A DNA stretch of 64,000 nt from Oculina patagonica (taxonomy: Eukaryota): the NCBI RefSeq assembly GCF_052425735.1, contig NC_135770.1, positions 6,262,001 through 6,326,000 of the forward strand. Direction: 5' to 3'. This document shows positions 4,201 to 60,400 of the stretch, piece by piece. How positions within the stretch are numbered: position 1 is the stretch's first letter; the number at the start of each line of letters is the position of its first letter. The notes under the pieces were generated by a model. That model ran no database searches and was not told the DNA's origin. It saw only the letters and a program-made list of their open reading frames with translations. The position numbers and the translations under genes were made by a program.

Positions 4201-7200
4201 GTATAAAGAGCTGATTTTAGACGGTTCTTCTAGTCTCACAAATGAATGTGAGGATAATGAATTAATACCTGGTGTGCCATAGACCTCCACTCTTAAACAT
4301 ATTGTTGTGTTAGTTGGTTTAAACCGGATACGTTGTGCCGTTATGATAGGAGTGGTAGGTGTCAGTTCATGGAAGTCAACCGCATTACCGTCATTGGAAG
4401 TTGCTGAAGTAAATGTCTGAGAACATGTAAACACAAATTACAGAAGATGCAGTTAATTAATGAAGCAGTTTTTTGGAAGTTATTCAGCAAGTTGGGTGGA
4501 CGACCATGTAAAAGGGTTGGGATAAGTGCTGTCTCTCTTAAGGGGGGAGGGGGGGGGGGGGTAAGAGCGGAACACCAAGTGTTCTTAACCTGTCAAGGTA
4601 TCTTTAATTTTAATGGTCCCACACGAAAAGATAAAACGATACCGTCATGCTGTGTCGGTGCCGAGCTTCGATTGATCTGAAATGAAATCTCTAGGAAGAT
4701 TTTCGTAAAAATGACCGCATCCGATTAAAGGCTTTCACCATATTTAAGTCACTTTATATGTCCTGTTCTGTTCTGGTGTTTCTGGCTGGTCAAGAAGAAG
4801 CTAGAGCCACGCCCAAACGTATGGGGCGCCAAGTGTAAAATAATTATTTCGCATAATTATATCGAAATTGTGTCAAAATTATATTAAAAATGTACATTAT
4901 TTCATATAAATCGTAAGGTTTTCCTATTAATTTTTTGAAATAATATTTGCATCCTTAATTAATGTTTTCATAAAATGACAAAACTTATGTTACATTATTT
5001 CAAACAATAAAAAAGGCCTTACAAAATTATATCAAACCATGCTCGTCCAAAGATATCTTTTATTTGAAATAATTTATCTTCATTTGCAACATTATTTCAA
5101 ATCACGATTTTTTACTTCATTCATGATTTCAAATAATGTTTCTTTGTTTCTTCAATTCATGGTTTCATGTAACGCATTATATCATATAGTTCATGGTTTC
5201 ATATGATGTATTATATTAAACAATCCATTGTTTCATATAATGCAATACCATATAATTCATGGTTTCGTATAATGCATTATATGATTTAATCCAAGGTTTC
5301 ATATAATTCAGGGTTTCAAATAATGCATTATATCATATAATCCATGGTTTCATATAATTCATGGTTTCATACAATGCATGGTTTCATATAACGCATGATA
5401 TCATATAATCCATGGTTTCATATAATGCATGGTTTCATATAATGTGTTATATCATATAACCCATGGTTTCATATAATTCATGGTGTCATATAACGCATGA
5501 TATCATATAATCCATGGTTTCATATAATGCATGGTTTCATATAATGTGTTATATCATATAACCCATGGTTTCATATAATTCATGGTGTCATATAACGCAT
5601 GATATCATATAATCCATGGTTTCATATAATGCATGGTTTCATATAATGTGTTATATCATATAATCCCTGGTTTCATATAATGAATATAGTCCATGGTTTC
5701 ATATAATGAATATAGTCCATGGTTTCATATAAGTCATGGATTCATGGGCCGGTTGGAAAACATGGACTGGACTCTGGACTGGACTGAACTTTATTGTTTT
5801 TGTTTCATGTTTTTCACCTCCCCGCGCCGGGGAGGTGGGTCCATTTTTAGTGGGGGTGAAGGGGATAGTGTTTTCTTGTTTTATGTTTTTTTTCTTATAA
5901 TTTTCAGGGTCAAGAAATTTGCGTGTCATCGGCAACGTCTATTTTGTCTACTAGTCAAAGTATAGTCACACGACGTTTTGATCTCAGCTTGAACTTTGTT
6001 TTCCCGCGAACGGTGAAAATTCTACTTCTGTTTGTCGTGAATGTGTGATTTGTCCCTATCTTGCTGGGGGATTTATTTATTGAAGGTTTGCTGCATTACA
6101 ATACCCTTACGCTGCAATGATTGTGGTTGCATCCCAAGCTGAAGATCCTGTATTGCTCTGCTTCTAATAAATAGTTCAATACCGTTCTAATAAGCAGTGC
6201 AATACAGGACCCTCAGGTTTGGATGCAACCACAGTCATTGCAGCGTAAGGGTATCAGTGTATTATAATGCAGCAAACCTCCAATAAATAAATCCCCAAGC
6301 AAGATAGGGACAAATCACACATTCACGACAAACAGAAGTAGAGTTTTCACCGTTCGCAGGAAAACAAAGTTCATGCTGAGATCAAAACGTAGTGTGACTA
6401 TACTTTGACTAGTAGATAAAACAGACATTGTTGCCAATGACACGCAAATTACTGACCCCGCTCCCCTCCGGGATGACAACACTAGACGCTCCCCCCACTA
6501 AAAGAAAAAAAGACAGAATAACTCCCCTCCCACCCCCACTGAAAATAATAAACATAAAACAAGAAAACACTAGCCCCTTCACCCCCACAAAAAATAGACC
6601 CACCTCCCCCTGGCACTAAAAATGAAAAACATGAAACAAAAACAAAAACAAAAACAAAAACAAAAAAGTTCAGTCCAGTTCAGTCCAGTCCTTGTTTTTC
6701 AACTGGCCTATGAAACCATGGATTATATGATGTAGTGCGTTATATGAAACCATGAATTATATGAAACCATGGATTCTAAGATATAATGCGTTATATGAAA
6801 CCACGATTTATATAAAACCATGGATTATACAAAACCACGGATTATATGATATAATGCATTATTTGAAACCATGAATTATATGAAACCTTGGATTAAATCA
6901 TATAACGCATTGTATGAAACCATGGATTGTATGATAAAATGCATTATATGAAACCATGAATTATATGGTATTGCATTATATTGAAACAATGGATTGTTTA
7001 ATATAATACATCATATGAAACCATGAACTATATGATATAATACATTACATGAAACCATGAATTGAAGAAACAAAGAAACATTATTTGAAATCATGAATGT
7101 AGTAACAAATCGTGGTTTGAAATAATGTTGATAATGAAGATAAATTATTTCAAATAAAAGATATCTTTGGACGAGCATGGTTTGATATAATTTTGTAAGG

Positions 7201-18335: not shown

Positions 18336-19520
18336 ATGTCTTCAACTTTACGCACCGTCTTATTTACAAACATTTCAACGGAGCCACTCCAAAGACTAAC
18401 CACAACTCCAACGCCATTCCTACAGGATGTCAAGTATCTTACAACTAGTGAAGTCGCTATAAGCACCTTGTACTACACTTGTGTGGTTTTCACAATTTTT
18501 GTCGGAAATGCACTAGTTATTTCAGCCTACCAGAAAAACTGGCGACTTCAAACAACTACAAACACTTTTATACTGGGCTTGGCTGTAGCAGATTTAATGG
18601 TGGGTTTCGTTTCAATTCCCTGCTGGTTTTACGTGTATAGCTGCCATTATTTCGACACTACACTTCATCCTGTTGGTTACGAACTGTACATAACGCTCGA
18701 TGTCTTCATAGGATGCGCGTCTATTTTTCAACTCACTGCTATTAGCATTGAGCGATGCATAGCCGTAGTTTGGCCGATCAGGCATCGCGGAATCCACGAA
18801 GGCGTCTTCCACGCCATGATATTAATCGCGTGGAGTTGCTCGGCTCTTGTGGCAGGACTGTACCCGATACAACTCAAGCATTGGGAAGAAGGCTACACGG
18901 TGTTCATATTTACAATGTGCTTTGTTGGGCCCTTTATCGTCATGTTTGCAGTGTACCTACTGATCTACGAAACAGCCGGTCGTTCGCGGACAAGGGTATA
19001 CCCCGAGCTAGCCGCTGCTACGATCCACAGGGAAATTCGCATTGCGGGTACAGTAGCCCTTGTTACCGGCCTCTTCATGATCGCGTGGTTCCCGTTCTTT
19101 GTCGTAACGGTGGTGGCTACGTACGATTTGGAACGCTTACCCGAGCCTCCTGGTCTCTTCCGCTTAATAGCGTTCGTGAAAGCACTGCACTATACAAACT
19201 CGGCACTAAACCCGATCTTGTACGGCTACCGTAACCCTGAAATGAGGAAAACTATGCATAGTGTAGCGTTCGCGTGCTGTCCGCTCCTCGCCATGTTCAA
19301 GAGGAGGCCATCTGGGTTGCAAGCCAGGTTAAACCGTGTTGGAATGCAGGCCTTCGTGCCCGGAACAATGTTAGCTGTGCCGAGCCTGTTCGAAAGACGA
19401 AGCACTCCAAGTAATAGTACAGCTACAACGGTTGTTGCGTTTGTTAATAGAGGCGGAGACGTGGAGTCAAGACCAGCAAGTTTACATGAATCTCTTAGAG
19501 AACTGAGCTCTGCAGAATAA
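18336..19520 (+). CDS. Class A (rhodopsin-like) GPCR, biogenic-amine-receptor-like, intronless
   Basis: 394-aa ORF with seven hydrophobic segments and the motifs GNALV (TM1), LAVADL (TM2), Asp in TM3 (LDVFIGCASI), ISIERC (DRY equivalent), AWFPFF (TM6) and NSALNPILY (NPxxY). Confidence 0.93.
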   Translation: MSSTLRTVLFTNISTEPLQRLTTTPTPFLQDVKYLTTSEVAISTLYYTCVVFTIFVGNALVISAYQKNWRLQTTTNTFILGLAVADLMVGFVSIPCWFYVYSCHYFDTTLHPVGYELYITLDVFIGCASIFQLTAISIERCIAVVWPIRHRGIHEGVFHAMILIAWSCSALVAGLYPIQLKHWEEGYTVFIFTMCFVGPFIVMFAVYLLIYETAGRSRTRVYPELAAATIHREIRIAGTVALVTGLFMIAWFPFFVVTVVATYDLERLPEPPGLFRLIAFVKALHYTNSALNPILYGYRNPEMRKTMHSVAFACCPLLAMFKRRPSGLQARLNRVGMQAFVPGTMLAVPSLFERRSTPSNSTATTVVAFVNRGGDVESRPASLHESLRELSSAE

Positions 19521-36951: not shown

Positions 36952-39438
36952 TCACATGTTTCCTCCAAATAATTCTCCAAGTTCTTCTTGGTCGTAGGAG
37001 TCGTTTTTCGCAAGCTCAGTTTTTACCCAGTCGATAACAACACCAATCTTGAGACCCTCATTAGCAATGTACTTGAACCCTTTGGACTTGCGTTTGTCAT
37101 GGACAGAAAGAGCGCACTGATGGATGCCTATTAAGTTCCACATGTCGTCAAAACAGGGACCCCCGGATGACCCATCGTCGGTATCTGCAGTGTAGCGCAG
37201 GAACGGAAGATTATATTCACAATTGTTCTTCTTCAGCGATGAGAACAAACCTCGCTTTTTAGCAACCGAACGATGTGCTTTGTAGCGGTGATGCTCAATA
37301 AAGGATTTGTCGAAGAGCTTCAGGTAGCTATCGTCTGCGTGCAGGATTTGATTTTCGCGTAGAACCACCATTTGTTTTTTGTCCTGAGGGAACTGGATTA
37401 TGTTCACGTGCGTGCCTGGTTTTTCTGAGGTGATCACCCTTTCGCAGTAACCGATGTCACTTAGGCTGGAATTTCCGTCAATGGATCTCTCAGATACAGC
37501 GATCAAAGCGATGTCGAGAGTGTCATCTGGATGAGCTAGGAAGAACCTCTCTGGTTCAAGCTTGAAGATTTCCTCTGTCATATGGTACACGCTACTGCTA
37601 GGATTGACTCTTTCAAATATCACCTTGCCCCTCTTACAAGTCTTAAAAACGTGTAAGGCAGTGAGAAGGAGCCGTTTGGAGACCATGGTGCCCGTCCCTT
37701 GTCCGCCATTCTGCAGGTGGATTTTCCCGATGAACCTACTGGTTTTAAACCCGTCATACAGGAAGCGGTTGCTCTGCAGCTCTCCACTGAACAGGGCTTC
37801 TTCTTTCAGCACGTCTTGCTTACATTCCGTGATCCAATCCCACAGTCCACTGAAAATTCCCTCGTGTGCTTCGTGGAAACGATGTTCGCTCGATTTTTTG
37901 TGCCTAAAAGTAGAACAAGAAAGTTGTTTTTAAAGGGGAAGTATCAGAAACCTTAAAATAATGGCCCAGATTTTTTTTTATAAATTTAATACCACCCAGT
38001 GTACTAAAACTGTCGACGAGTGTCTCTGGCCATAGATGGAATGGGTCGAAATGAATTACAACTTAAAAAAGTCACTCCGACATTTTCAAGTGCTCGCATT
38101 CTTGTTTTCAACTGAGCCTGCGTAGCAGGCGCCGTAGTTTCGAGCGCGCGTATGGGAAACGCGAAAGGCGCGAGGGGGCCACGCGAGGATAAAAATCGCG
38201 CACTCTTTTAAACGCGCTAAAAAAAGGTACACAGACGCCTGCTACACGGGCTAGTTTTCAAAATGCGCTAGAAACAATCTCGCGCCTTTCAAATTCCCAA
38301 AAACTACTAAAAATAACTACACAGGCACGTTCTACGCAGGCTACCTTTTTCAAGAAATTCAAAATTTGAAAACAAGTTAAGGTAATTAAGAAGAAAAAAA
38401 TAATAGAAATCCTTGTGATACTTCCCTTTTAAAACGTATTACAGTCAAGCTCACCTCCCATAAAAGACACTTTACTTACAGTAGGGCCTCTTTATATGGA
38501 GAAACCCTAACCTCCACCTCCCTCATCCCCCCACCCCACCCCCCGCGCTTGTGCCGCGGTCCGACGGTTAATTAATTTTTCAGCTCAATGATGAACATGT
38601 TTGAACACGGCGTAACTTACCTTAAAATCGCATCAATTTGATCCTGATCAGTGTGAGCTCCTAGACAAAATGTATTTATGATGATGAAAATTAAAAAGGT
38701 TATATGGAGAAACTTAAGTTTCTTTAGAACGTCTTTGATTTAAAAATAGCAGGCATTGACCTTGAATTCGATGACGTCACCAGACCACGCCGAATCGCGT
38801 TACTTCCCAAAAAACAACTCATCACGCAACCGAACTTAATCACGCGAAGGTTAATATCCTTCCGCCGTTCTTACCTCGTATGAAACTTGATTTCAACTTA
38901 AACGCTGTGTACGTATTTACGTAAACCGTAAACTTTTGGGAAGGTAATTACTCGTTTTTGACCACATTTTGGACGAGAATGCAGCAATACGAGAAGGACA
39001 ATCGACTGCTCGACATAAATCATCTAAATATCTTTTTTGAACGCGAGATCGACAAAGTCGATTATGTTCTGCTTTTTGATGCTTTTTAATCGATTTGAGA
39101 TTTGAAAGATTGCTTTTAAAAGCAGCATTTTATATTCTTAAATTCCGAGATGCGCGACCCTTCCAAATTGATTTCTTGAATTGACGATCAACAGGATCAA
39201 AGACTTCAGTGTGTACATTCAAAACAACAAATGTCTTGTGTACGTATAGCCGTTTATATTAATAGTATAAATGGCGCTAAAACAGTCTAAAATGAAGCTT
39301 GAAGCGAAACTCAAGCCCTTGAAAACATGTCGTTAAACAACTTTTGATGTGTACAGAGATTACGTTTGTAGACTTTTGAATGAAATATGAATAAAAATTA
39401 CCTTGGTTTGCTTTTGAAGACTCGTTGGGATTCGGCAT
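36952..39438 (-). CDS. Trypsin-like (V8/Trypsin_2-type) serine protease of bacterial type, no signal peptide
   Basis: Exons (minus): 39438-39402 (MPNPNESSKANQ), 38660-38621, 37903-36952, with GT-AG introns in phases 1 and 2. Catalytic triad motifs: GTGTMVS..LLLTALHV (His), LDIALIAV (Asp), YTADTDDGSSGGPCF..W.LIGIH (Ser). Confidence 0.85.
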
Positions 39439-39552: not shown

Positions 39553-40590
39553 CTCTTATAACAATTATTTTATCAATGACCCGATTGTATGCGGGAATTT
39601 TTCGGGGAAGCCCCGATTTCGGGGGAAGCCCCAGTTTTCCAAGAATAGCCGTGATATAAACGGTCTGAAGTTCCCGTTGTTCTTGGCAATAATTTCCGGA
39701 AATGATTCTTTGTATGCGAAATGCAGTTTCTCCGTTAAAACAGTGCGTATCTTTGCAATTATTTTATAGTTTGCAATCTTTGTTCCTTTGTTACACCCTC
39801 GCGTGACTGACTAGTTTGATCACGTAACTATCTGGAACTCTTAAGTCCCCATTTCGAGGCGGAAGTGATATCGAATAATCTGAAACAACACCTGATCCAG
39901 CAATTGATCATAACAGAACTTCAAACTCAATTTGGTTCAGTATTTCCTATACCTAGGGAATCGGACTGTTTAATTTTCGTTCTCGGTATTTTAGTGGTAA
40001 TTTGTGCATTTGGTCGTTCTTGTTCAGTTTCTGCCTGTATTCTGTCGCAGGTCTGTATTAAATTTGCCAAAGTTGATTTGTGGGTTCGAAATGGCTAAAA
40101 AAGAAAAAAAAAACTGACTATAAGATTTGATTGGTAAGTCTCTTATTAATTTAAAACTCCTCTGGATCTTTCGGCTCTTGCTGGGATTTACTGTTTCACC
40201 GGTACTTGTTATTCGGGAAAGCCCCGGTTTCCAAGAATCCGCGCAAGATATGTCACTTGTATTTTCATTTTCTTTTCAAAGCGTGCACCTATAGAAGTCT
40301 CATTCTCGATCTAGAAACACCTTCCAGTCACAGTTGTTAACAGTCTTGGTAACGACATATGCGAATAAGCTTTCACTCTCGATAATTCATTTAATGTTAT
40401 TTCTTGTTTCAATGTTAGTTGACATCTAAACTCCTTCAGGTCTTCAATTAGTATGCATCTGTCATCGGCTTCCCCGCGGAACGGGGTTCCCAGACTGATG
40501 CATGTGGGAACTTTCCTAATTGTCTTTTTCAAAGTTTCCATATTTCCCCAACTGTGGGAGACGTTTCTCTAGAAAAGTCCCCAGTATTTG
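39553..40590 (-). promoter_or_regulatory. Protease promoter with TATA-like box and cluster of NF-kB-like and STAT/GAS-like sites
   Basis: GGGGAAGCCCC at 39604-39614 and 39622-39632, GGGAAAGCCCC at 40215-40225, GGGAACTTTCC at 40506-40516, GGGAATTTTT at 39593, TTCCAAGAA at 39637 and 40229, and TATAAGAG on the minus strand at 39560-39553. Confidence 0.55.
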
Positions 40591-40918
40591 TCTATGGCAA
40601 TCATCAAACAGACCCAGGCTGGTCAGCATGACTTAGTAATCAAAACACAGCTCTTTATATTAGGCCCATGTCACAACTGAAAGTTAAATTACAAGACAAA
40701 AAGAATATTGTACCGTCCTCGCATTTCCACGACTTACACCACAAGGATTGGAACATGTTTTAAAGCACCACCAGGCCCCCTCACATATGACCCAGGGTCC
40801 CGGAGCCGATACGGTTGGTTGGGGAGCAGCCCAAAAATCGAGATTAGCAAGAAGAACGGCGAGCGAAAAAAAAAAAAAAAAAATGGCGAGCGTCTTTTGT
40901 TTTACTCGCCGTTCTTTA

Positions 40919-41646
40919 TAGCCTGTGTACAGCCGTCCCCTTCTCCTCAAAATCATCGGGCAAAGGATACTGGAACACGATAAACGACGGCGCAACACAG
41001 ACGTTCATTTCCCTGATTTTTTTGAGGGGAGGGGGACGGCTGTACAAAATGCGCCCAAAAAACTTTATTATTATTATCATTATTATTACACAGGCTAGCC
41101 GTTCTTCGCAATGCTCCCCAACAAACCGAATCGAACGCCTGGAACAGGCCAGAAAGCCGATGAATGCGGAACGATAACAACTATAGCCTGCGAATACAGC
41201 CGCCTCTCATTCGCGTCCCGCAACGAAGAGCGAAACCGTGTTTTTGCTCTTCGTTGCGGGACGCGAATGAGAGGCGGCTGTATTCGCAGGCTATAACAAC
41301 TACTAAGAGGCTGTACACGGAGTTACATCATCCCGGCAGTATGGAATTTTTTGGGTCGAATATCAGATGTATGAAACGCTAACTCCTAAATCTTTGGAGT
41401 GCAACTCAGTAGCCCTTTGTTATATATGGGCTAACCCTTGGATATGGGCAAACGCGCGCTTTGATTAGTTCCTTACTAACACCTAGACTGTGCTTTGAAC
41501 GAAGAAACGACCAATGAAACAAAGGTGACTCATCCTCGGAGTGCCAGGGGCAGCTAGTCGGGACAACGGGATTTTCGGGCGAAAGTTTACAACAAGCCCG
41601 AAAATCCCGTCGTCCCGACTAGCTGCCCCTGGGACTCCGAAGATGA
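40919..41646. mobile_element. Cluster of short hairpin MITEs (TAGCC..GGCTA type)
   Basis: 40919-41097, 41184-41293 (tagcctgcgaatacagccg / cggctgtattcgcaggcta) and 41529-41646. Relatives at 30857-30942 and 38114-38253. Confidence 0.65.
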
Positions 41647-54457: not shown

Positions 54458-57400
54458 ATGTTACGAGTTCACGCTCCACGTTTCAAGAAAATCATACAAC
54501 AGCAGTTTACTTCAAGCAGTGGAATATGGTCCACCTGCCGTTACATCCATGCAGGAAAAAAGTTTGACCAGGGTCAAAAACCTGAGCCACGAAGGACTGA
54601 AATAAAGAAGCTCCTGGTTGCGAATCGTGGTGAAATTGCTATTAGAGTTTTCCGAGCCTCTGCTGAGGCTGGGATCAGGACTGTTGCCATTTACTCAGAA
54701 CAGGATGCTAATCAGATGCACAGACAAAAGGCCGATGAGGCATACCTCATCGGCAAGGGAATGCCCCCAGTTGCAGCTTATTTAAATATTCCAGAGATCA
54801 TAAAAATAGCAAAGGTAAGTGAGTGAATAAAGAAAGCAATATGGATTACCCCATTTGGCGGAATGACGGAATGGTGATATTATTGCCCTAACCAACAAAT
54901 AAAAGTTAACTGCAAGTAAACTGGTCAGAAAGCTAAAAAATGGCAAGCAAACCGGAGTAAAAGCTTACCACAAGCTAACTATGGTGAAGCTAACTGCAAG
55001 CAAACTAGTGACATTCAGTTATTCTGCCATTACCTTGAATAAATTAAAGTCAGTCTTGAAAGCAGTTTGTATTAAAAATGATTCTTGAAAGAGCTGACCC
55101 TGGCCAGAGTTAAATCCACACACTTTTTAAAACCTACAATGTAATGTTTAAGGTCGCTGAGCTCCACTTACAAGTATTTGTAAGAACCAAAAAAAATATA
55201 CACATGTAGTTTTTGTGTTTTTAAGAAAAACAACAATTTTTTTAAGTTTGAAAGTCGTGTTTCGACAGAGCGTCTGTCATCTTCAGTTGAATGGTTTACA
55301 AAGCACAGAGAGTTGAATAATAAGTAGTCAAAAAATGCTAATTAAGACTGAAGTATTAACAACAGAACGTGAAAATGTGTGAATTAGAAGGATAATTTTA
55401 GATTTACCGGTACATGGTGTAATTGCTGATTGAGGCAAGGTATAGTTCCTTTTGAATATGGATAGCCTCCTTTATCTTAAGTTGAAAGCTGGTAGAGGCG
55501 TAATCTAAAGTATGAAAGCCATCTATTGAACACAAGGAGTGACAACGTTCAGAATTCTGAAGGTGTTTGAAAATGTGAGAGGCCTTATCACTGGCTAAGT
55601 GCTCACGCACGTGTGTGGCAAAATGTCTGGTGGTTTCGCCAACATAACAGGCATAACAGCTCGCACATGCAAACTTATAAACCACATGCGAACGGAGACC
55701 GCCAGGGATAGGGTCTTTCACCCCAAAAAGATTACCGATCTTAAAAGAAGAAAAAACTAGTTTGATATCTAAATCATTACAATAGCGCTTAATTAGACAT
55801 TTCGCATTCTGTTGTTACTACTTGTCTTAATAAGGATTTTTTGTCTACTTTTGTATTCAACTCTCTGTGCTTTGTAAACCATTCAACTGAAGATGACAGA
55901 TGCTCTGTCGAAACATGTCTTTCAAACTTAAAAATTTTTTCGTTTTTCATAAAATCTTTATGTGTCTGCTGTTCTCAAGAGTTTTTGTGTTGTTGTTGAT
56001 TCAACATTATTCAATTATCTAGGAAACTGGAGCTGATGCCGTCCATCCAGGCTATGGGTTCCTCTCTGAAAGAGCCAACTTTGCCGAGGCCTGTGTCAAG
56101 AATGGCCTCATTTTCATTGGTCCATCGCCAGCAATAGTTAAAATGATGGGGGACAAAGTAGAAGCGCGAAGAGTAGCAGTAGAAGCTGGTGTCCCAGTGG
56201 TTCCTGGCACAGAGAACCCAATCCGAACAGCGGAAGAGGCCAAAGCCTTCTGTGAGGAGCATGGGCTGCCAGTCATTACTAAGGCGGCGTATGGAGGAGG
56301 AGGGCGTGGTATGAGAGTGATCCATAGAATGGAAGATGTTGAAGAGTTTTTCAATTTAGCCAGCAATGAAGCATATGCTGCTTTTGGTGATGGTTCAATG
56401 TTTATTGAAAAGTTTGTTGGTGAGTGTTATTATTTAATATTTTGAGTGACTGGTCCAATAATTTAAATATACATGACCTGGGTACAAACAAAGGTAGATA
56501 ATCCAGCTGGAATTGCTGTTATGATAGTCCTGGTTGTCCCAGCTGTCCTGGTTGTTCCGGTTCTCCCAGCTGTCCCGGTTATTCCAGTTGTCCCAGTTGT
56601 TTTAGCTGTCCCGGTTATCCCAGTTATCACAGTTGTCCCAGTTATCCCAGTTGTCCCAGATGTCCCAGTTGCCCTTGTTGTCACAGTTGTCCCGGTTGCC
56701 CCGGTTGCCCTGGTTGTCCCAATTGTCCCAGTTGTCCCAGCTGTCCCGGTTTTCCCAGCTGTCCCGGTTGTCCCAGCTTTCTTATTTTTACTCAGTTGTG
56801 CCAAGTGTCCTAACAGTCCCGGCTGGTCCAACTGTCCTCATTATCTGATTATTTGGTGTGCGTGATGTCAAGAAGTAATTAATATATAACAACTGTACCC
56901 AGTGACGTCACTTAGGACTTGTTATATGGAGCATGACCCATCCTATTCAAGGGGGAGTAGAAATACTTATAGTGGCTTCATGCTGCTGAAACCGGAATTA
57001 GCTCTCATTAGGGCCATTAGGCCCAAACACAGACTGTGCTCCGCAGTAACTGGGATAAGGTCTGGTGCCTATGGGACACTTCAGCCTTATGCTGACTTTA
57101 ACCTTTTTAACTTTTTCAGAAAAACCAAGACACATTGAGGTCCAAGTGATGGGCGATGCTTACAAGAATGTGGTGCACCTTTACGAAAGGGATTGCTCTG
57201 TCCAGAGACGTCACCAGAAGATCCTAGAGATTGCACCAGCTCCAGACTTAGCTCCTGAAATCAGAGACAGAATGACAAGGGATGCCATTACTTTGTGTAA
57301 GGCAGTGGGTTACGAGAATGCAGGGACAGTCGAGTTCCTGTTGGATCCAGAAGGAAATCATTACTTCATGGAAGTTAATGCACGACTACAAGTGGAACAC

Positions 57401-60400
57401 ACTGTGACGGAAGAGATAACAGGGTGAGTCTGTTACTCCTGACTGTAATATTGTTGAGTAGAAAATAATGTACTGTTGTCACTTGGCGTTCTTTTGGATT
57501 TGAATGTTTAAAGTGAGGTTACATGGCGTAAACTGTAATAGCCAAGACCTCTTTAGTTATGTATATAAATTACCCATTTCAGATCATTTGATGCTCTCAA
57601 GAGAATTGTTCCTTTGTCTATCTGGAAATTATTTATTCATTTTGAATTCATGTGAATTTATTTAAATTTGAAAGAAATATACTCAATGTAACACCACATG
57701 GTCTACAAATTAATGAGACAACAAACAAACAAAGGTAAAGAGGTTAATTCAGAGTTCAGGGGCAGATCTAGGGGGATTGTGTAGAGGGTGCACCCCACTA
57801 TTAACTTGGGTACTGATGAATCGTTGGGCCAGCCAGATAGAATGTTGAGAGATAGCCTTCCAAACTTTAAGCCCTTAATTCATGCCACCCACTGTACATG
57901 TACATGTAAGAGCTAGGATCCACTGGGGCTCAAAAATGGCTTTACTTTCAATTGTCGACTTGCAGTGTCGACCTGGTGAGAGCGCAAATTGGTGTTGCTG
58001 AGGGAAAAACTTTGGAAGAAATAGGACTGCGCCAAGAGGATATCAGAGTTACTGGATCAGCTCTTCAAGCTCGTATCACAACAGAAGATCCCGCTAATGA
58101 CTTCACACCAGATACAGGAAGGATTGAGGTACATGTAACTGTAAAAGTATTGTCGAAAATGCTTTTTGATTAAACTAAAAAGCCAATTGTCAAGGGTATT
58201 ATCTGCTTGACATCTCTGATGTGGCTTTTTGGTGAGATCAGATATAAGGTATTCTACCTACATGTACTGAGGTCTTATGGAGTATTAATTGTTCTCGGCC
58301 AGGGGTGCTCAACCCTTTATCCCCTAAGGCGAATGGTCTTTGTTCGTAAATTAAAAACTATAAACCTGCTATCATATATGATACATCATATGAAAGGTGT
58401 TGATCAGTATGTTTCATAAAACACTTGAATCAATGAGAAGGAAGTAATAGTTTTGAAAGAAATGGGTTAAAACGTTTAAAAGAAAAAGATTAAAAAGTTC
58501 GTTTCTCTCCCAGTTGTCCTAGTTGTCAGTTAACTAGTTAATTTCAGTAATGTTGCATATCACCTATGCGGCCAGGTAAAAAAGTTTTAAAAGTTATAGG
58601 GCTGGTCAATCAACAACTTTATGCTTTCAAAATGCAGTTCTTTGGAAGACAGGTTTGGTGTCAAAAATTCAAATAAATTGGACAAATATTGACACTATGT
58701 GCCAATTGACACTCTTAGGGGTTAAAGAGTTTAATAATAATAACAGTCAATAATTTGGAACATAATTTACCTTTTTGTACTGTATAGAGACTGAGGATTT
58801 CATTTTTTGTTATCAGTGAAAGCTTGTCCACTGATCATAAAATTATTAAAAACAAATAACACCATAAGTCTTGTCTCATGGTGAACAAAATCGAAAACTG
58901 GATCAAACTTTTCCCAGTCTACTGCAATCTCATGTTCGGCTTTGTTATCTTCACGATGTAGGTTTTCCGCACTGGAGAAGGAATGGGAATTCGTCTGGAT
59001 GGAAGTTCCATGTTCCCAGGTGCTGTGGTCTCTCCTCACTACGACTCACTCTTGACTAAAGTTATCAGTCACGGTGCAAATCACAGAGATGCCGCAACCA
59101 AGCTGCTCAGGGCACTGCGTGAGTTCAGAATTAGAGGTGTCAAGGTATGAAATCCTCTCAATCTATATTTTTGCTTTTAAAAATTAATATCAATTATCAT
59201 GTGAACGGTTACAATCATGTATCTGTGTCTTCAAAATGGTCCACACTTAAATTAATTTTTGCATCATGCAGGCTTGGTGACTATAGCAGAATTGTTTCTC
59301 TCCCTGGATGGGTTGTTAGTCCAATGCCAGGTTACCCTCAGCATTTTGTCACATTGCCCTTTACTTACGGCCTCAGATTCAAAACTTAATCGCAAAGCTT
59401 CATCTTGTATTAAATCGAATACATGTCAATGAATTAACTCCCTTCACTAATTACAACTACAAAAAATTCGTTTTATACGGGCATGCCATTGTGAGAAAAA
59501 AAACCAACATAACACGAGCTTATATAAAAATATCGCTCTGGCACACACATGCTAATTTTATGAAAATGGTGTCTCCTGTGTCGAACATTTTATACAGCCC
59601 AATGAGAAACGTGAAATCAACTCTCGATACGATACGCAAAACAATCCATCCATAAGCGAAACTATTTTGAATATCACCAGCTTGAGACTTCAGCGCTGTA
59701 CTGCTAGTGCACTCGAGAGAAACGGGACTCGTCTCGAGAGAAACGAGATTCGTCTCGAGAGAAACGAGTCGCGTCTCGAGCGAAACGAGACACGTCTCGA
59801 GCGAAACGAGATTCGTCTCGAGAGAAACGAGATTCGTCTCGAGAGAAACGAGACACGTCTCGAGCGAACCGAGACACGTCTCGAGCGAAACGAGATTCGT
59901 CTCCAGAGAAACGAGATTCGTCTCCAGAGAAACAAGACGCGTCTCGCGAGACGGTAGTAAATTACTTACTTTGGAGCGGTACTGTATTCTGTAGTTGCTT
60001 CATGCTACAGCGGAATGAACTGTGAGCTAGTTGGGCTTAAAAGTCTTTACTTTTTTAACGCCTTCTTCTCAGTTGCACTGGCTGTGTGCAACCCGAGATT
60101 CCTAACCCTGATAGATTAAATAATTTTCCTGTAATTGCCGCATGGTCAACCATTGTTGAAATAATTTTTAAAGAAAGATAAATCATTCTTTGTTTTTTTT
60201 TTTTGCAGACCAATATTCCTTTCTTAATGAATTGTCTCAAACAAGAAGATTTCCTTGGAGGGGCTGTCACCACCGATTTCATTCTCAACAAACCAGAGTT
60301 ACTGAAGGTGGAACGAGGCCAAAACCGCGCACAAAAACTACTTCAATATCTTGGAAATGTGATGGTTAATGGACCCTGTACACCTTTGGCGACTGGACTG

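What the first reader, a model, noticed from the sequence alone, without database searches (positions are those of the whole stretch)
39553..40590. Dense NF-kB + STAT(GAS) motif cluster directly upstream of the protease
Seen: within ~1.1 kb upstream of the protease ATG there are GGGAATTTTT (39593), GGGGAAGCCCC twice (39604, 39622), GAAGTTCCC (39667), GGGAAAGCCCC (40215), GGGGTTCCC (40483), GGGAACTTTCC (40506) and AAAAGTCCCC (~40573). A composite of kB site, 3-4 nt and TTCCAAGAA occurs twice (39622-39645 and 40215-40237), the first just upstream of a TATA-like box. I did not notice such density elsewhere in the window. Knowledge: GGGRN(N)WYYCC is the NF-kB site and TTCNNNGAA is the STAT GAS site; both factors exist in cnidarians. 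Inference: the bacterial-like protease is wired into an NF-kB/STAT-inducible programme, a candidate undescribed innate-immune module.
Basis: partly seen in the sequence, partly recalled or inferred. Interest (0 to 1): 0.8.

Follow-up and report, generated by a model that had tools for sequence, protein, structure and literature searches.

The report
Conserved NF-kB/STAT-like promoter module, coral protease
Just upstream of a bacterial-type protease gene in a stony coral sits a short DNA element that looks like joined docking sites for the immune regulators NF-kB and STAT, and it is kept in every related coral examined, so it is very probably a real control switch, although its response to immune signals is untested.

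Summary
The cluster is non-random: 4 of the window's 9 strict kB-consensus loci lie in this 1 kb (P about 0.002), and the GAS+kB composite occurs twice against 0.006 expected per 64 kb.

The density is not eight independent sites. It comes from three local copies of one element: a proximal copy with a doubled kB, a distal copy 592 nt upstream, and a decayed inverted copy.

That element is conserved. A 14-nt core (an 11-bp p50-type kB site overlapping a TTCCCCGAA-type GAS) lies 100-195 nt upstream of the protease ATG, in gene orientation, in every orthologous locus where exon 1 could be placed. These include Stylophora, Desmophyllum, a Pocillopora-like Tara contig, several unnamed corals and a Desmophyllum paralogue. 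It occurs nowhere else in about 100 kb of fetched orthologous loci.

It stayed with the gene through an inversion in pocilloporids. It is not a dispersed repeat.

The distal 11-mer is identical to a site that Nematostella NF-kB binds in EMSA (PMC10329013).

The scan had already noted GAS/kB-type modules elsewhere in this genome (s1-271028, s1-293960, s1-271121).

The parts
36952..37903 (-). Protease exon 3 (trypsin-like domain with His/Asp/Ser motifs, includes the stop codon)
   Evidence: ORF; sequence. 98% identical to Oculina patagonica 'y4fB-like' protein P0001. Pfam Trypsin_2, E = 5.7e-15.
38621..38660 (-). Protease exon 2 (40 nt)
   Evidence: AG/GT borders read. The spliced reading matches the P0001 N-terminus. 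Conserved in L001-L003.
39402..39438 (-). Protease exon 1 coding part (ATG at 39438-39436; GT donor at 39401)
   Evidence: It encodes MPNPNESSKANQ, against MPNPNESSKADQ in P0001.
39555..39580 (-). Core-promoter candidates downstream of the module: conserved block GTCATTGATAAAA (39568-39580) and TATAAG (39555-39560)
   Evidence: The block is the second-best conserved 12-mer in the unbiased scan and is aligned in A1. It lies about 120-140 nt before the ATG. An orthologue's RNA contig has a 5' UTR of at least 82 nt.
39601..39645 (-). Proximal module. In gene orientation: GAS-like TTCTTGGAA (39645-39637), kB GGGGCTTCCCC (39632-39622), an 18-nt tandem second kB (39614-39604) and an overlapping TTCCCCGAA (39609-39601)
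   Evidence: This is the orthologous position, 163-207 nt upstream of the ATG. The core matches all orthologues.
39593..39602 (+). GGGAATTTTT half-site-like string, which is the 3' flank of the proximal kB
   Evidence: It does not meet the strict kB consensus.
40215..40237 (-). Distal module copy: TTCTTGGAA, then ACC, then GGGGCTTTCCC, 592 nt upstream of the proximal copy
   Evidence: It aligns to L002. A distal copy at 593 nt that shares the TTTCCC variant exists in L013. The 11-mer equals the Nv TRAF3 EMSA probe site.
40467..40494 (+).
   Evidence: Inverted repeat I5. Local alignment score 29, against a null mean of 16.3, sd 2.2 and maximum 26.
40506..40516 (+). Isolated kB-consensus 11-mer GGGAACTTTCC
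   Evidence: It is not alignable to the orthologues, so its significance is unknown.

Best explanation
The region holds the promoter of the minus-strand protease gene. Its key part is a cis-regulatory module of about 30-45 bp. Read in gene orientation, the module is a GAS-type palindrome (TTCYNRGAA), 2-4 nt of spacer, and an 11-bp p50-type kB site (GGGRNTTYCCC) whose 3' half overlaps a second GAS-type palindrome (TTCCCCGAA). A TATA-like core promoter follows about 40-60 nt downstream.

Shown here:
- The module is the best-conserved promoter element across all orthologues and a paralogue.
- It is gene-specific and keeps its orientation.
- It moved with the gene through an inversion.
- In this genome it has been copied locally: an 18-nt tandem kB, a distal copy at -780, and a decayed inverted copy at about -1030. 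Those copies create the apparent 'cluster'.

Inferred:
- The single p50-like coral NF-kB dimer binds the kB core and activates transcription on immune or stress signalling.
- A STAT dimer can use the flanking GAS together with NF-kB, or the overlapping GAS instead of it, as in the mammalian IRF-1 GAS/kB element.
- The distal copy, which has its own TATA-like stretch, may act as an upstream enhancer or as an alternative promoter.
For: Motifs and statistics are. The gene model is confirmed by P0001.

Conservation:
- blastn found the composite as the only alignable upstream piece against L002.
- The core 14-mer GGGRNTTYCCCGRA occurs with 0-1 mismatch, in gene orientation, upstream of the protease in L001, L002, L003, L004 (Stylophora, GGGGATTCCCC at -146), L005 (Desmophyllum), L007, L008, L012 and L013 (two copies). 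No other zero-mismatch match occurs in 162 kb.
- The Desmophyllum paralogue L015 also carries TTCTCGGAA + GGGGCTTCCCC.
- An unbiased 12-mer scan of the 400-nt upstream regions of 7 loci ranks the kB/GAS core first. Its total Hamming distance is 5, against a null minimum of 15.
- Among five closer relatives the module is the longest near-invariant promoter block, in a background that is 27% invariant.
- In Stylophora and L007 the protease is inverted relative to FIBP and TAF6, yet it keeps the module.

Specificity: there are no further copies in the window. A metagenome-wide exact scan returned four orthologous promoters and two chance hits in unrelated coding DNA.

Factor assignment:
- GGGAAAGCCCC is contained in an Nv TRAF3 promoter probe that recombinant Nematostella NF-kB binds in EMSA. 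GGGAATTCCC, the standard cnidarian NF-kB probe, is contained in L001's site (PMC10329013).
- Cnidarian NF-kB has a p50-like specificity by protein-binding microarray (PMC5700166).
- TTTCCCCGAAA is a standard STAT1 GAS probe (PMC3507856).
- The invariant GGG lies in the spacer between the two GAS sites, which argues for kB. The conserved GAA after CCCC lies outside the kB 11-mer, which argues for the overlapping GAS.
Against: - There is no binding, chromatin or expression evidence for this gene in any coral.
- A motif match cannot assign the factor.
- The upstream GAS is broken in Desmophyllum L005, L007, L008 and the distal copy of L013. The overlapping GAS is TTT- rather than TTC- in both distal copies.
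- A spliced RNA contig (L012) starts 443 nt upstream of the ATG and contains the module. At least some transcripts therefore read through it, and the TSS is not mapped.
- Most orthologous contigs come from unnamed holobiont assemblies, and the merulinid-like group (L001-3, L012-13) is closely related. The number of independent lineages is about four or five, not eleven.
Confidence: 0.6

Rival explanations
1. A conserved promoter element that is bound by some other factor, or by STAT alone as a tandem GAS pair. On this reading the NF-kB resemblance is a by-product of a G-rich spacer next to TTCCCCGAA.
For: In Stylophora the module reads as two identical TTCCCCGAA palindromes 17 nt apart. GAA after the kB 11-mer is conserved although kB does not need it. 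Unchecked scan notes report conserved paired GAS palindromes in other promoters of this genome.
Against: The upstream GAS is lost in four copies, while the GGG...CCC of kB is invariant in all 14 copies, including the spacer-located GGG. Both distal copies lose the strict overlapping GAS (TTTCCC) but keep a perfect kB 11-mer, one of them identical to an EMSA-validated cnidarian site.
Confidence: 0.25
2. The module acts as part of the transcript (a 5' UTR or upstream-transcript element) rather than as a DNA site for transcription factors.
For: The spliced RNA contig L012 contains the module 180-206 nt before the ATG. Contigs L011 and L014 from the same JGI sample series extend far upstream and break at the exon 1 border.
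Against: Another RNA contig of the same species starts at -82, downstream of the TATA box. The conserved letters follow the dyad pattern of dimeric DNA-binding factors. A TATA box sits 25-45 nt downstream of the module in several lineages. A read-through transcript from the duplicated distal promoter explains L012.
Confidence: 0.07
3. A chance motif cluster, or a fragment of a dispersed repeat or transposon, with no function for the protease.
For: The local density is inflated by duplication. MITE-like hairpins lie nearby at 40807-41295. Several of the listed strings are only half-sites.
Against: Position, orientation and sequence are conserved across all orthologues and a paralogue, and through an inversion. 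No other copies occur in the window or in the loci. A collection-wide scan finds only orthologous promoters plus two unrelated chance hits. The cluster has P about 0.002.
Confidence: 0.03

Closest known systems
Composite GAS/kB element of the mammalian IRF-1 promoter (Pine 1997, Nucleic Acids Res 25:4346; listed in the references of PMC3708578; the paper itself was not held, so details are from my own knowledge)
   Same: A TTCCCCGAA-type GAS lies directly next to or overlapping a kB site in a proximal promoter. This arrangement allows two immune signalling pathways to converge on one element.
   Different: The gene here is a cytosolic-looking trypsin-like protease of bacterial type, not a transcription factor. 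There is an extra upstream GAS 2-4 nt from the kB, and the kB is a p50-type 11-mer. No binding or synergy data exist. Homology of the elements is not implied, only a similar design.
Validated kB sites in the Nematostella TRAF3 promoter (PMC10329013)
   Same: The probe containing GGGAAAGCCCC is bound by recombinant Nv-NF-kB in EMSA, and the same 11-mer is the window's distal site (40215-40225). Sites lie within 1 kb of the start, there are several per promoter, and the reporter needs them.
   Different: Those sites were tested experimentally and these were not. No GAS partner or deep cross-species conservation was reported in the passages I read. The species is a sea anemone, not a stony coral.
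Palindromic 11-bp p50-homodimer site GGGGATTCCCC of the MHC class I H-2Kb type (own knowledge)
   Same: The Stylophora orthologue carries exactly this 11-mer at -146. Cnidarian NF-kB is p50-like in specificity (PMC5700166).
   Different: In mammals, p50 homodimers lack an activation domain and often repress. How the coral protein behaves at this site is unknown.

Membership tests
NF-kB (kB) binding site | Matches the consensus GGGRNNYYCC or the 11-bp p50-type GGGRNTTYCCC | tested here: met
   Window sites at 39604, 39622 and 40215. All orthologues and the paralogue match.
NF-kB (kB) binding site | The sequence is one that a cnidarian NF-kB has been shown to bind in vitro | tested here: met
   GGGAAAGCCCC (window 40215-40225) is contained in Nv TRAF3 EMSA probe 1. 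GGGAATTCCC (inside L001's site) is the standard probe. This is identity of sequence, not a test of this locus.
NF-kB (kB) binding site | Occupied by NF-kB in vivo and needed for induced transcription | not testable with these tools
   Needs EMSA, ChIP or CUT&RUN, and reporter mutagenesis. No published data were found.
NF-kB (kB) binding site | Evolutionary constraint on the dyad half-sites | tested here: met
   GG, TT and CCC columns are invariant in A1. It is the top-ranked conserved 12-mer and the longest invariant promoter block among close relatives.
STAT GAS site | TTCN3GAA palindrome | tested here: met
   Window: 39637-45, 40229-37 and 39601-09. TTCTTAGAA, TTCCCCGAA, TTCTCGGAA or TTCCCGGAA occur in the orthologues. 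TTTCCCCGAAA is a standard STAT1 probe.
STAT GAS site | Palindrome conserved across orthologues | tested here: inconclusive
   The upstream GAS is kept in 9 copies and broken in L005, L007, L008 and the L013 distal copy. The overlapping GAS is kept in the proximal copies but is TTT- in both distal copies and has N4 spacing in two copies.
STAT GAS site | Bound by a cnidarian STAT | not testable with these tools
   I found no DNA-binding data for cnidarian STAT. Only the presence of the gene family is described in the literature (PMC4583530).
Composite GAS/kB element (IRF-1 type) | GAS and kB adjacent or overlapping in a proximal promoter, with a fixed arrangement | tested here: met
   Fixed order, orientation and 2-4 nt spacing in 9 copies. 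The module lies 100-210 nt from the ATG.
Composite GAS/kB element (IRF-1 type) | Synergistic response to two pathways | not testable with these tools
   Requires stimulation experiments.
Dispersed repeat / transposon fragment | Many copies at unrelated sites | tested here: not met
   No further copy in the 64-kb window at up to 3 mismatches. In 162 kb, zero-mismatch matches occur only upstream of the protease. The metagenome scan returned only orthologous promoters plus 2 chance hits. A whole-genome scan of the host was not possible.

The most novel reading that the evidence does not exclude
Robust-clade stony corals took up a bacterial trypsin-like protease whose nearest profile matches include the protease modules of bacterial anti-phage systems (RT-protease, Lamassu LmuA). 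They placed it under a compact NF-kB/STAT composite switch and have kept that switch through speciation, gene duplication and an inversion. The result would be an inducible, apparently cytosolic immune effector of bacterial origin, and one of the first conserved direct NF-kB/STAT target promoters defined in corals. It may belong to a wider GAS/kB regulon hinted at by other notes on this genome.
Probability: 0.3. Interest if true: 0.8.

Novelty: new member of a known kind. Interest (0 to 1): 0.6.

Why it matters
Among the papers I read, the only direct NF-kB target shown in a cnidarian was Nematostella TRAF3 (PMC10329013); I did not look for coral ones. I also found no DNA-binding data for a cnidarian STAT. 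Here a 30-45 bp element with a precise, conserved architecture sits in front of a lineage-restricted, bacterial-type protease. That gives a concrete probe and reporter for asking whether coral NF-kB and STAT co-regulate effectors. It also offers a marker gene for immune activation in bleaching and disease studies, and a case of how a horizontally acquired gene is wired into host immune control.

Tried and rejected
- Transposon or reverse-transcriptase remnant. Read by eye on the minus strand, the composite translates to something like F-L-E-x-G-F-P, which resembles an RT N-terminal motif. No ORF or further similarity continues on either side. The fixed position before the ATG in all orthologues explains it better, so I did not pursue this with profile searches.
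- Dispersed repeat. Rejected.
- Heat-shock element. The TTC/GAA spacing is 3 nt, not 2, so it does not fit by inspection.
- ISRE/IRF, EBF and Su(H) consensus sequences. None fits all copies, by inspection.
- Literature searches that failed: y4fB and LOC111340559 gave no coral paper; Pine 1997 is not held.
- Exon 1 of L008 could not be located, so the distance from module to ATG is unknown there.
- GAS sites alone are not enriched in the region.

Full report
**Gene context**

The window is stony-coral DNA. The 286-codon minus-strand ORF at 36952-37812 is the last exon of a three-exon gene:
- exon 1: 39438-39402, with the ATG at 39438
- exon 2: 38660-38621
- exon 3: 37903-36952

The spliced product matches the N-terminus and the full length of the annotated Oculina patagonica protein 'y4fB-like', P0001, at 98% identity. 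It is a Trypsin_2/Trypsin domain protein. It has weak profile matches to protease modules of bacterial defence systems.

Homologues above 55% identity come only from coral or coral-holobiont sources. The next hits are below 35% identity; two of the five are annotated as an Acidobacteria serine protease or a V8-like endopeptidase.

All eight listed strings are at their stated coordinates. With the strict consensus (GGGRNNYYCC or the 11-mer form), the window holds nine kB loci, close to the 7.9 a first-order Markov model predicts. Four of them (39604, 39622, 40215, 40506) fall in this 1 kb, and the rest are isolated. Only 0.2% of simulated windows reach four sites in any 1038-nt span.

The composite 'GAS, 2-5 nt, kB' occurs twice, both here and both on the gene's strand, against 0.006 expected per 64 kb. 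GAS sites alone are not enriched.

Two corrections are needed:
- The hits are not independent. The proximal pair is an 18-nt tandem duplication, and the distal composite is a second copy 592 nt upstream (alignment score 34 against a null maximum of 25). The stretch at 40467-40494 is a decayed inverted copy of the proximal double kB (score 29 against a null mean of 16.3 and sd of 2.2).
- The 'TATA-like box' at 39653-39661 lies upstream of the composite in gene orientation. The plausible core-promoter elements are the conserved block at 39568-39580 and TATAAG at 39555-39560.

**Conservation is the decisive result**

I fetched orthologous loci through the protease protein: L001-L003 and L008 (ENA coral holobiont assemblies), L004 (Stylophora pistillata), L005 (Desmophyllum pertusum) and L007 (Tara Pacific contig, Pocillopora-like).

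FIBP and/or TAF6 exons flank the gene in L001-L005 and L007, as they do in the window, so these are true orthologues. L008's flanks were not examined; it is tied in only through the protease exons.

- blastn against L001-L003 aligned only exons and, in L002, one further 37-nt piece. That piece is exactly the composite.
- Each locus carries the same arrangement in gene orientation: TTCTTAGAA + 2-3 nt + GGGA(A/G)TTCCCC in L001-L003, TTCCCCGAA + ACT + GGGGATTCCCC in Stylophora, and GGGGCTTCCCC in Desmophyllum.
- The 14-nt core GGGRNTTYCCCGRA has zero-mismatch matches only upstream of the protease, and always on the gene's strand, in 162 kb of window plus loci.
- The kB site lies about 100-195 nt before the ATG in L001-L005, L007 and L012.
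- A Desmophyllum paralogue about 1 Mb away (L015) also carries TTCTCGGAA + AACC + GGGGCTTCCCC upstream.

An unbiased test gave the same answer. I took every 12-mer of the window's 400-nt upstream region and summed its best Hamming distance to six orthologous upstream regions. The top hits all fall in the kB/GAS core, with a total distance of 5. The best value in 100 shuffles was 15 and the mean was 18. The next block is the GTCATTGATAAA core-promoter candidate.

Among five closer relatives, where the promoter can be aligned, 27% of columns are invariant. The module is the longest near-invariant block outside the start of the coding sequence.

In Stylophora and L007 the protease is inverted relative to FIBP and TAF6, yet it keeps the module at -105 to -146. 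The element therefore belongs to the protease gene, not to the intergenic neighbourhood.

**It is not a dispersed repeat**

The 25-nt unit has no other match in the window at up to three mismatches. One exact scan of the metagenome collection with a degenerate 26-nt pattern gave six loci. Four are orthologous protease promoters from JGI coral samples, and two are chance matches inside unrelated coding DNA.

One of the four, L013, has a second full promoter copy 593 nt upstream of the proximal one. That is almost the same spacing as in the window. Both distal copies share the TTTCCC variant. The two-copy layout may therefore be old rather than specific to this genome.

**Which factor binds**

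The invariant letters are the GGG and TT(Y)CCC of a dyad 11-mer. That is the p50-type kB pattern.

Published work supports the fit:
- Anemone NF-kB has p50-like specificity on binding microarrays (PMC5700166).
- Recombinant Nematostella NF-kB binds a TRAF3-promoter probe containing GGGAAAGCCCC, which is identical to window 40215-40225. It also binds GGGAATTCCC, which is contained in L001's site (PMC10329013).

The GGG lies in the spacer between the two GAS-type palindromes. A STAT-only model does not explain why it is invariant. Conversely, the GAA that follows CCCC lies outside the kB 11-mer but is kept in nearly all copies. It completes TTCCCCGAA, a standard STAT1 probe sequence (PMC3507856).

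The upstream GAS is kept in nine copies and is broken in four. My reading is therefore:
- NF-kB site: well supported at the sequence level.
- Overlapping GAS: moderately supported.
- Upstream GAS: lineage-variable.

The design resembles the IRF-1 GAS/kB composite (Pine 1997, reference seen, details from my own knowledge). In such overlapping arrangements the two factors may cooperate through the flanking site or compete at the shared one.

**Open points**

- No binding, chromatin or expression data exist for this gene. Searches for y4fB and for the Stylophora locus name found nothing relevant.
- The transcription start is not mapped. One RNA contig of an orthologue begins at -82. Another, which is spliced, begins at -443 and contains the module. 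This fits a read-through from a distal promoter copy but leaves a 5' UTR role formally possible.
- Species names are lacking for most contigs. I count about four or five independent lineages: the window with Oculina, Desmophyllum, the L008 species, the L001-3/L012-13 group, and the pocilloporids.
- The whole host genome could not be scanned, so a regulon cannot be assessed. Unchecked notes from this scan report GAS-pair and kB modules in other promoters of the same genome. I treat these as leads only.

**Verdict**

Immune inducibility still has to be shown at the bench.

Noticed in passing
window 36952-39438 compared with L004 7001-8896 and L007 2191-4173: In the pocilloporid loci the protease gene, with its promoter, is inverted between FIBP and TAF6. 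The window, Desmophyllum and L001-L003 share the other orientation.
   Followed up: partly
L015 5745-6040: The Desmophyllum paralogue has an inverted (palindromic) duplication of the promoter plus exon 1, with a reversed kB site at 5895-5904. It lies between the upstream composite (5673-5696) and the real ATG.
   Followed up: partly
window 40807-41295: Nested inverted repeats of MITE type lie between TAF6 and the protease promoter. They include a near-perfect 54-nt hairpin (41182-41235 / 41242-41295, 98% complementary) and 42-nt arms at 40926-41046.
   Followed up: no
L008 763-1239: A 117-nt unit is repeated 360 nt apart (85% identity). Each copy carries a kB-like 11-mer (GGGATTCTCCC / GGGATTTTCCC), upstream of that locus's composite at 1465-1500. 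The unit may be a mobile or satellite element.
   Followed up: no
L002 4020-4060, L012 60-115, L013 3150-3215: In the merulinid-like group a degenerate third promoter copy sits about 170 nt upstream of the proximal one. It keeps the TTC..GAAAT part but has lost the kB. A conserved CAGGAACAAC..GGAAC..GAATAGAAGG block precedes each copy.
   Followed up: no
window 18336-19520 (+): An intronless 394-codon ORF whose sequence looks like a rhodopsin-type GPCR.
   Followed up: no
window 54458-57427 (+): Exon-like ORFs with a biotin-carboxylase / ATP-grasp signature (pyruvate- or acetyl-CoA-carboxylase type).
   Followed up: no
window 36952-37903 (protein): The protease has no obvious signal peptide. 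Its best PADLOC matches are protease modules of bacterial defence systems (RT-Protease class XI at E = 9e-9, LmuA at E = 3e-6). This fits a bacterial origin, as noted in s1-286750.
   Followed up: partly
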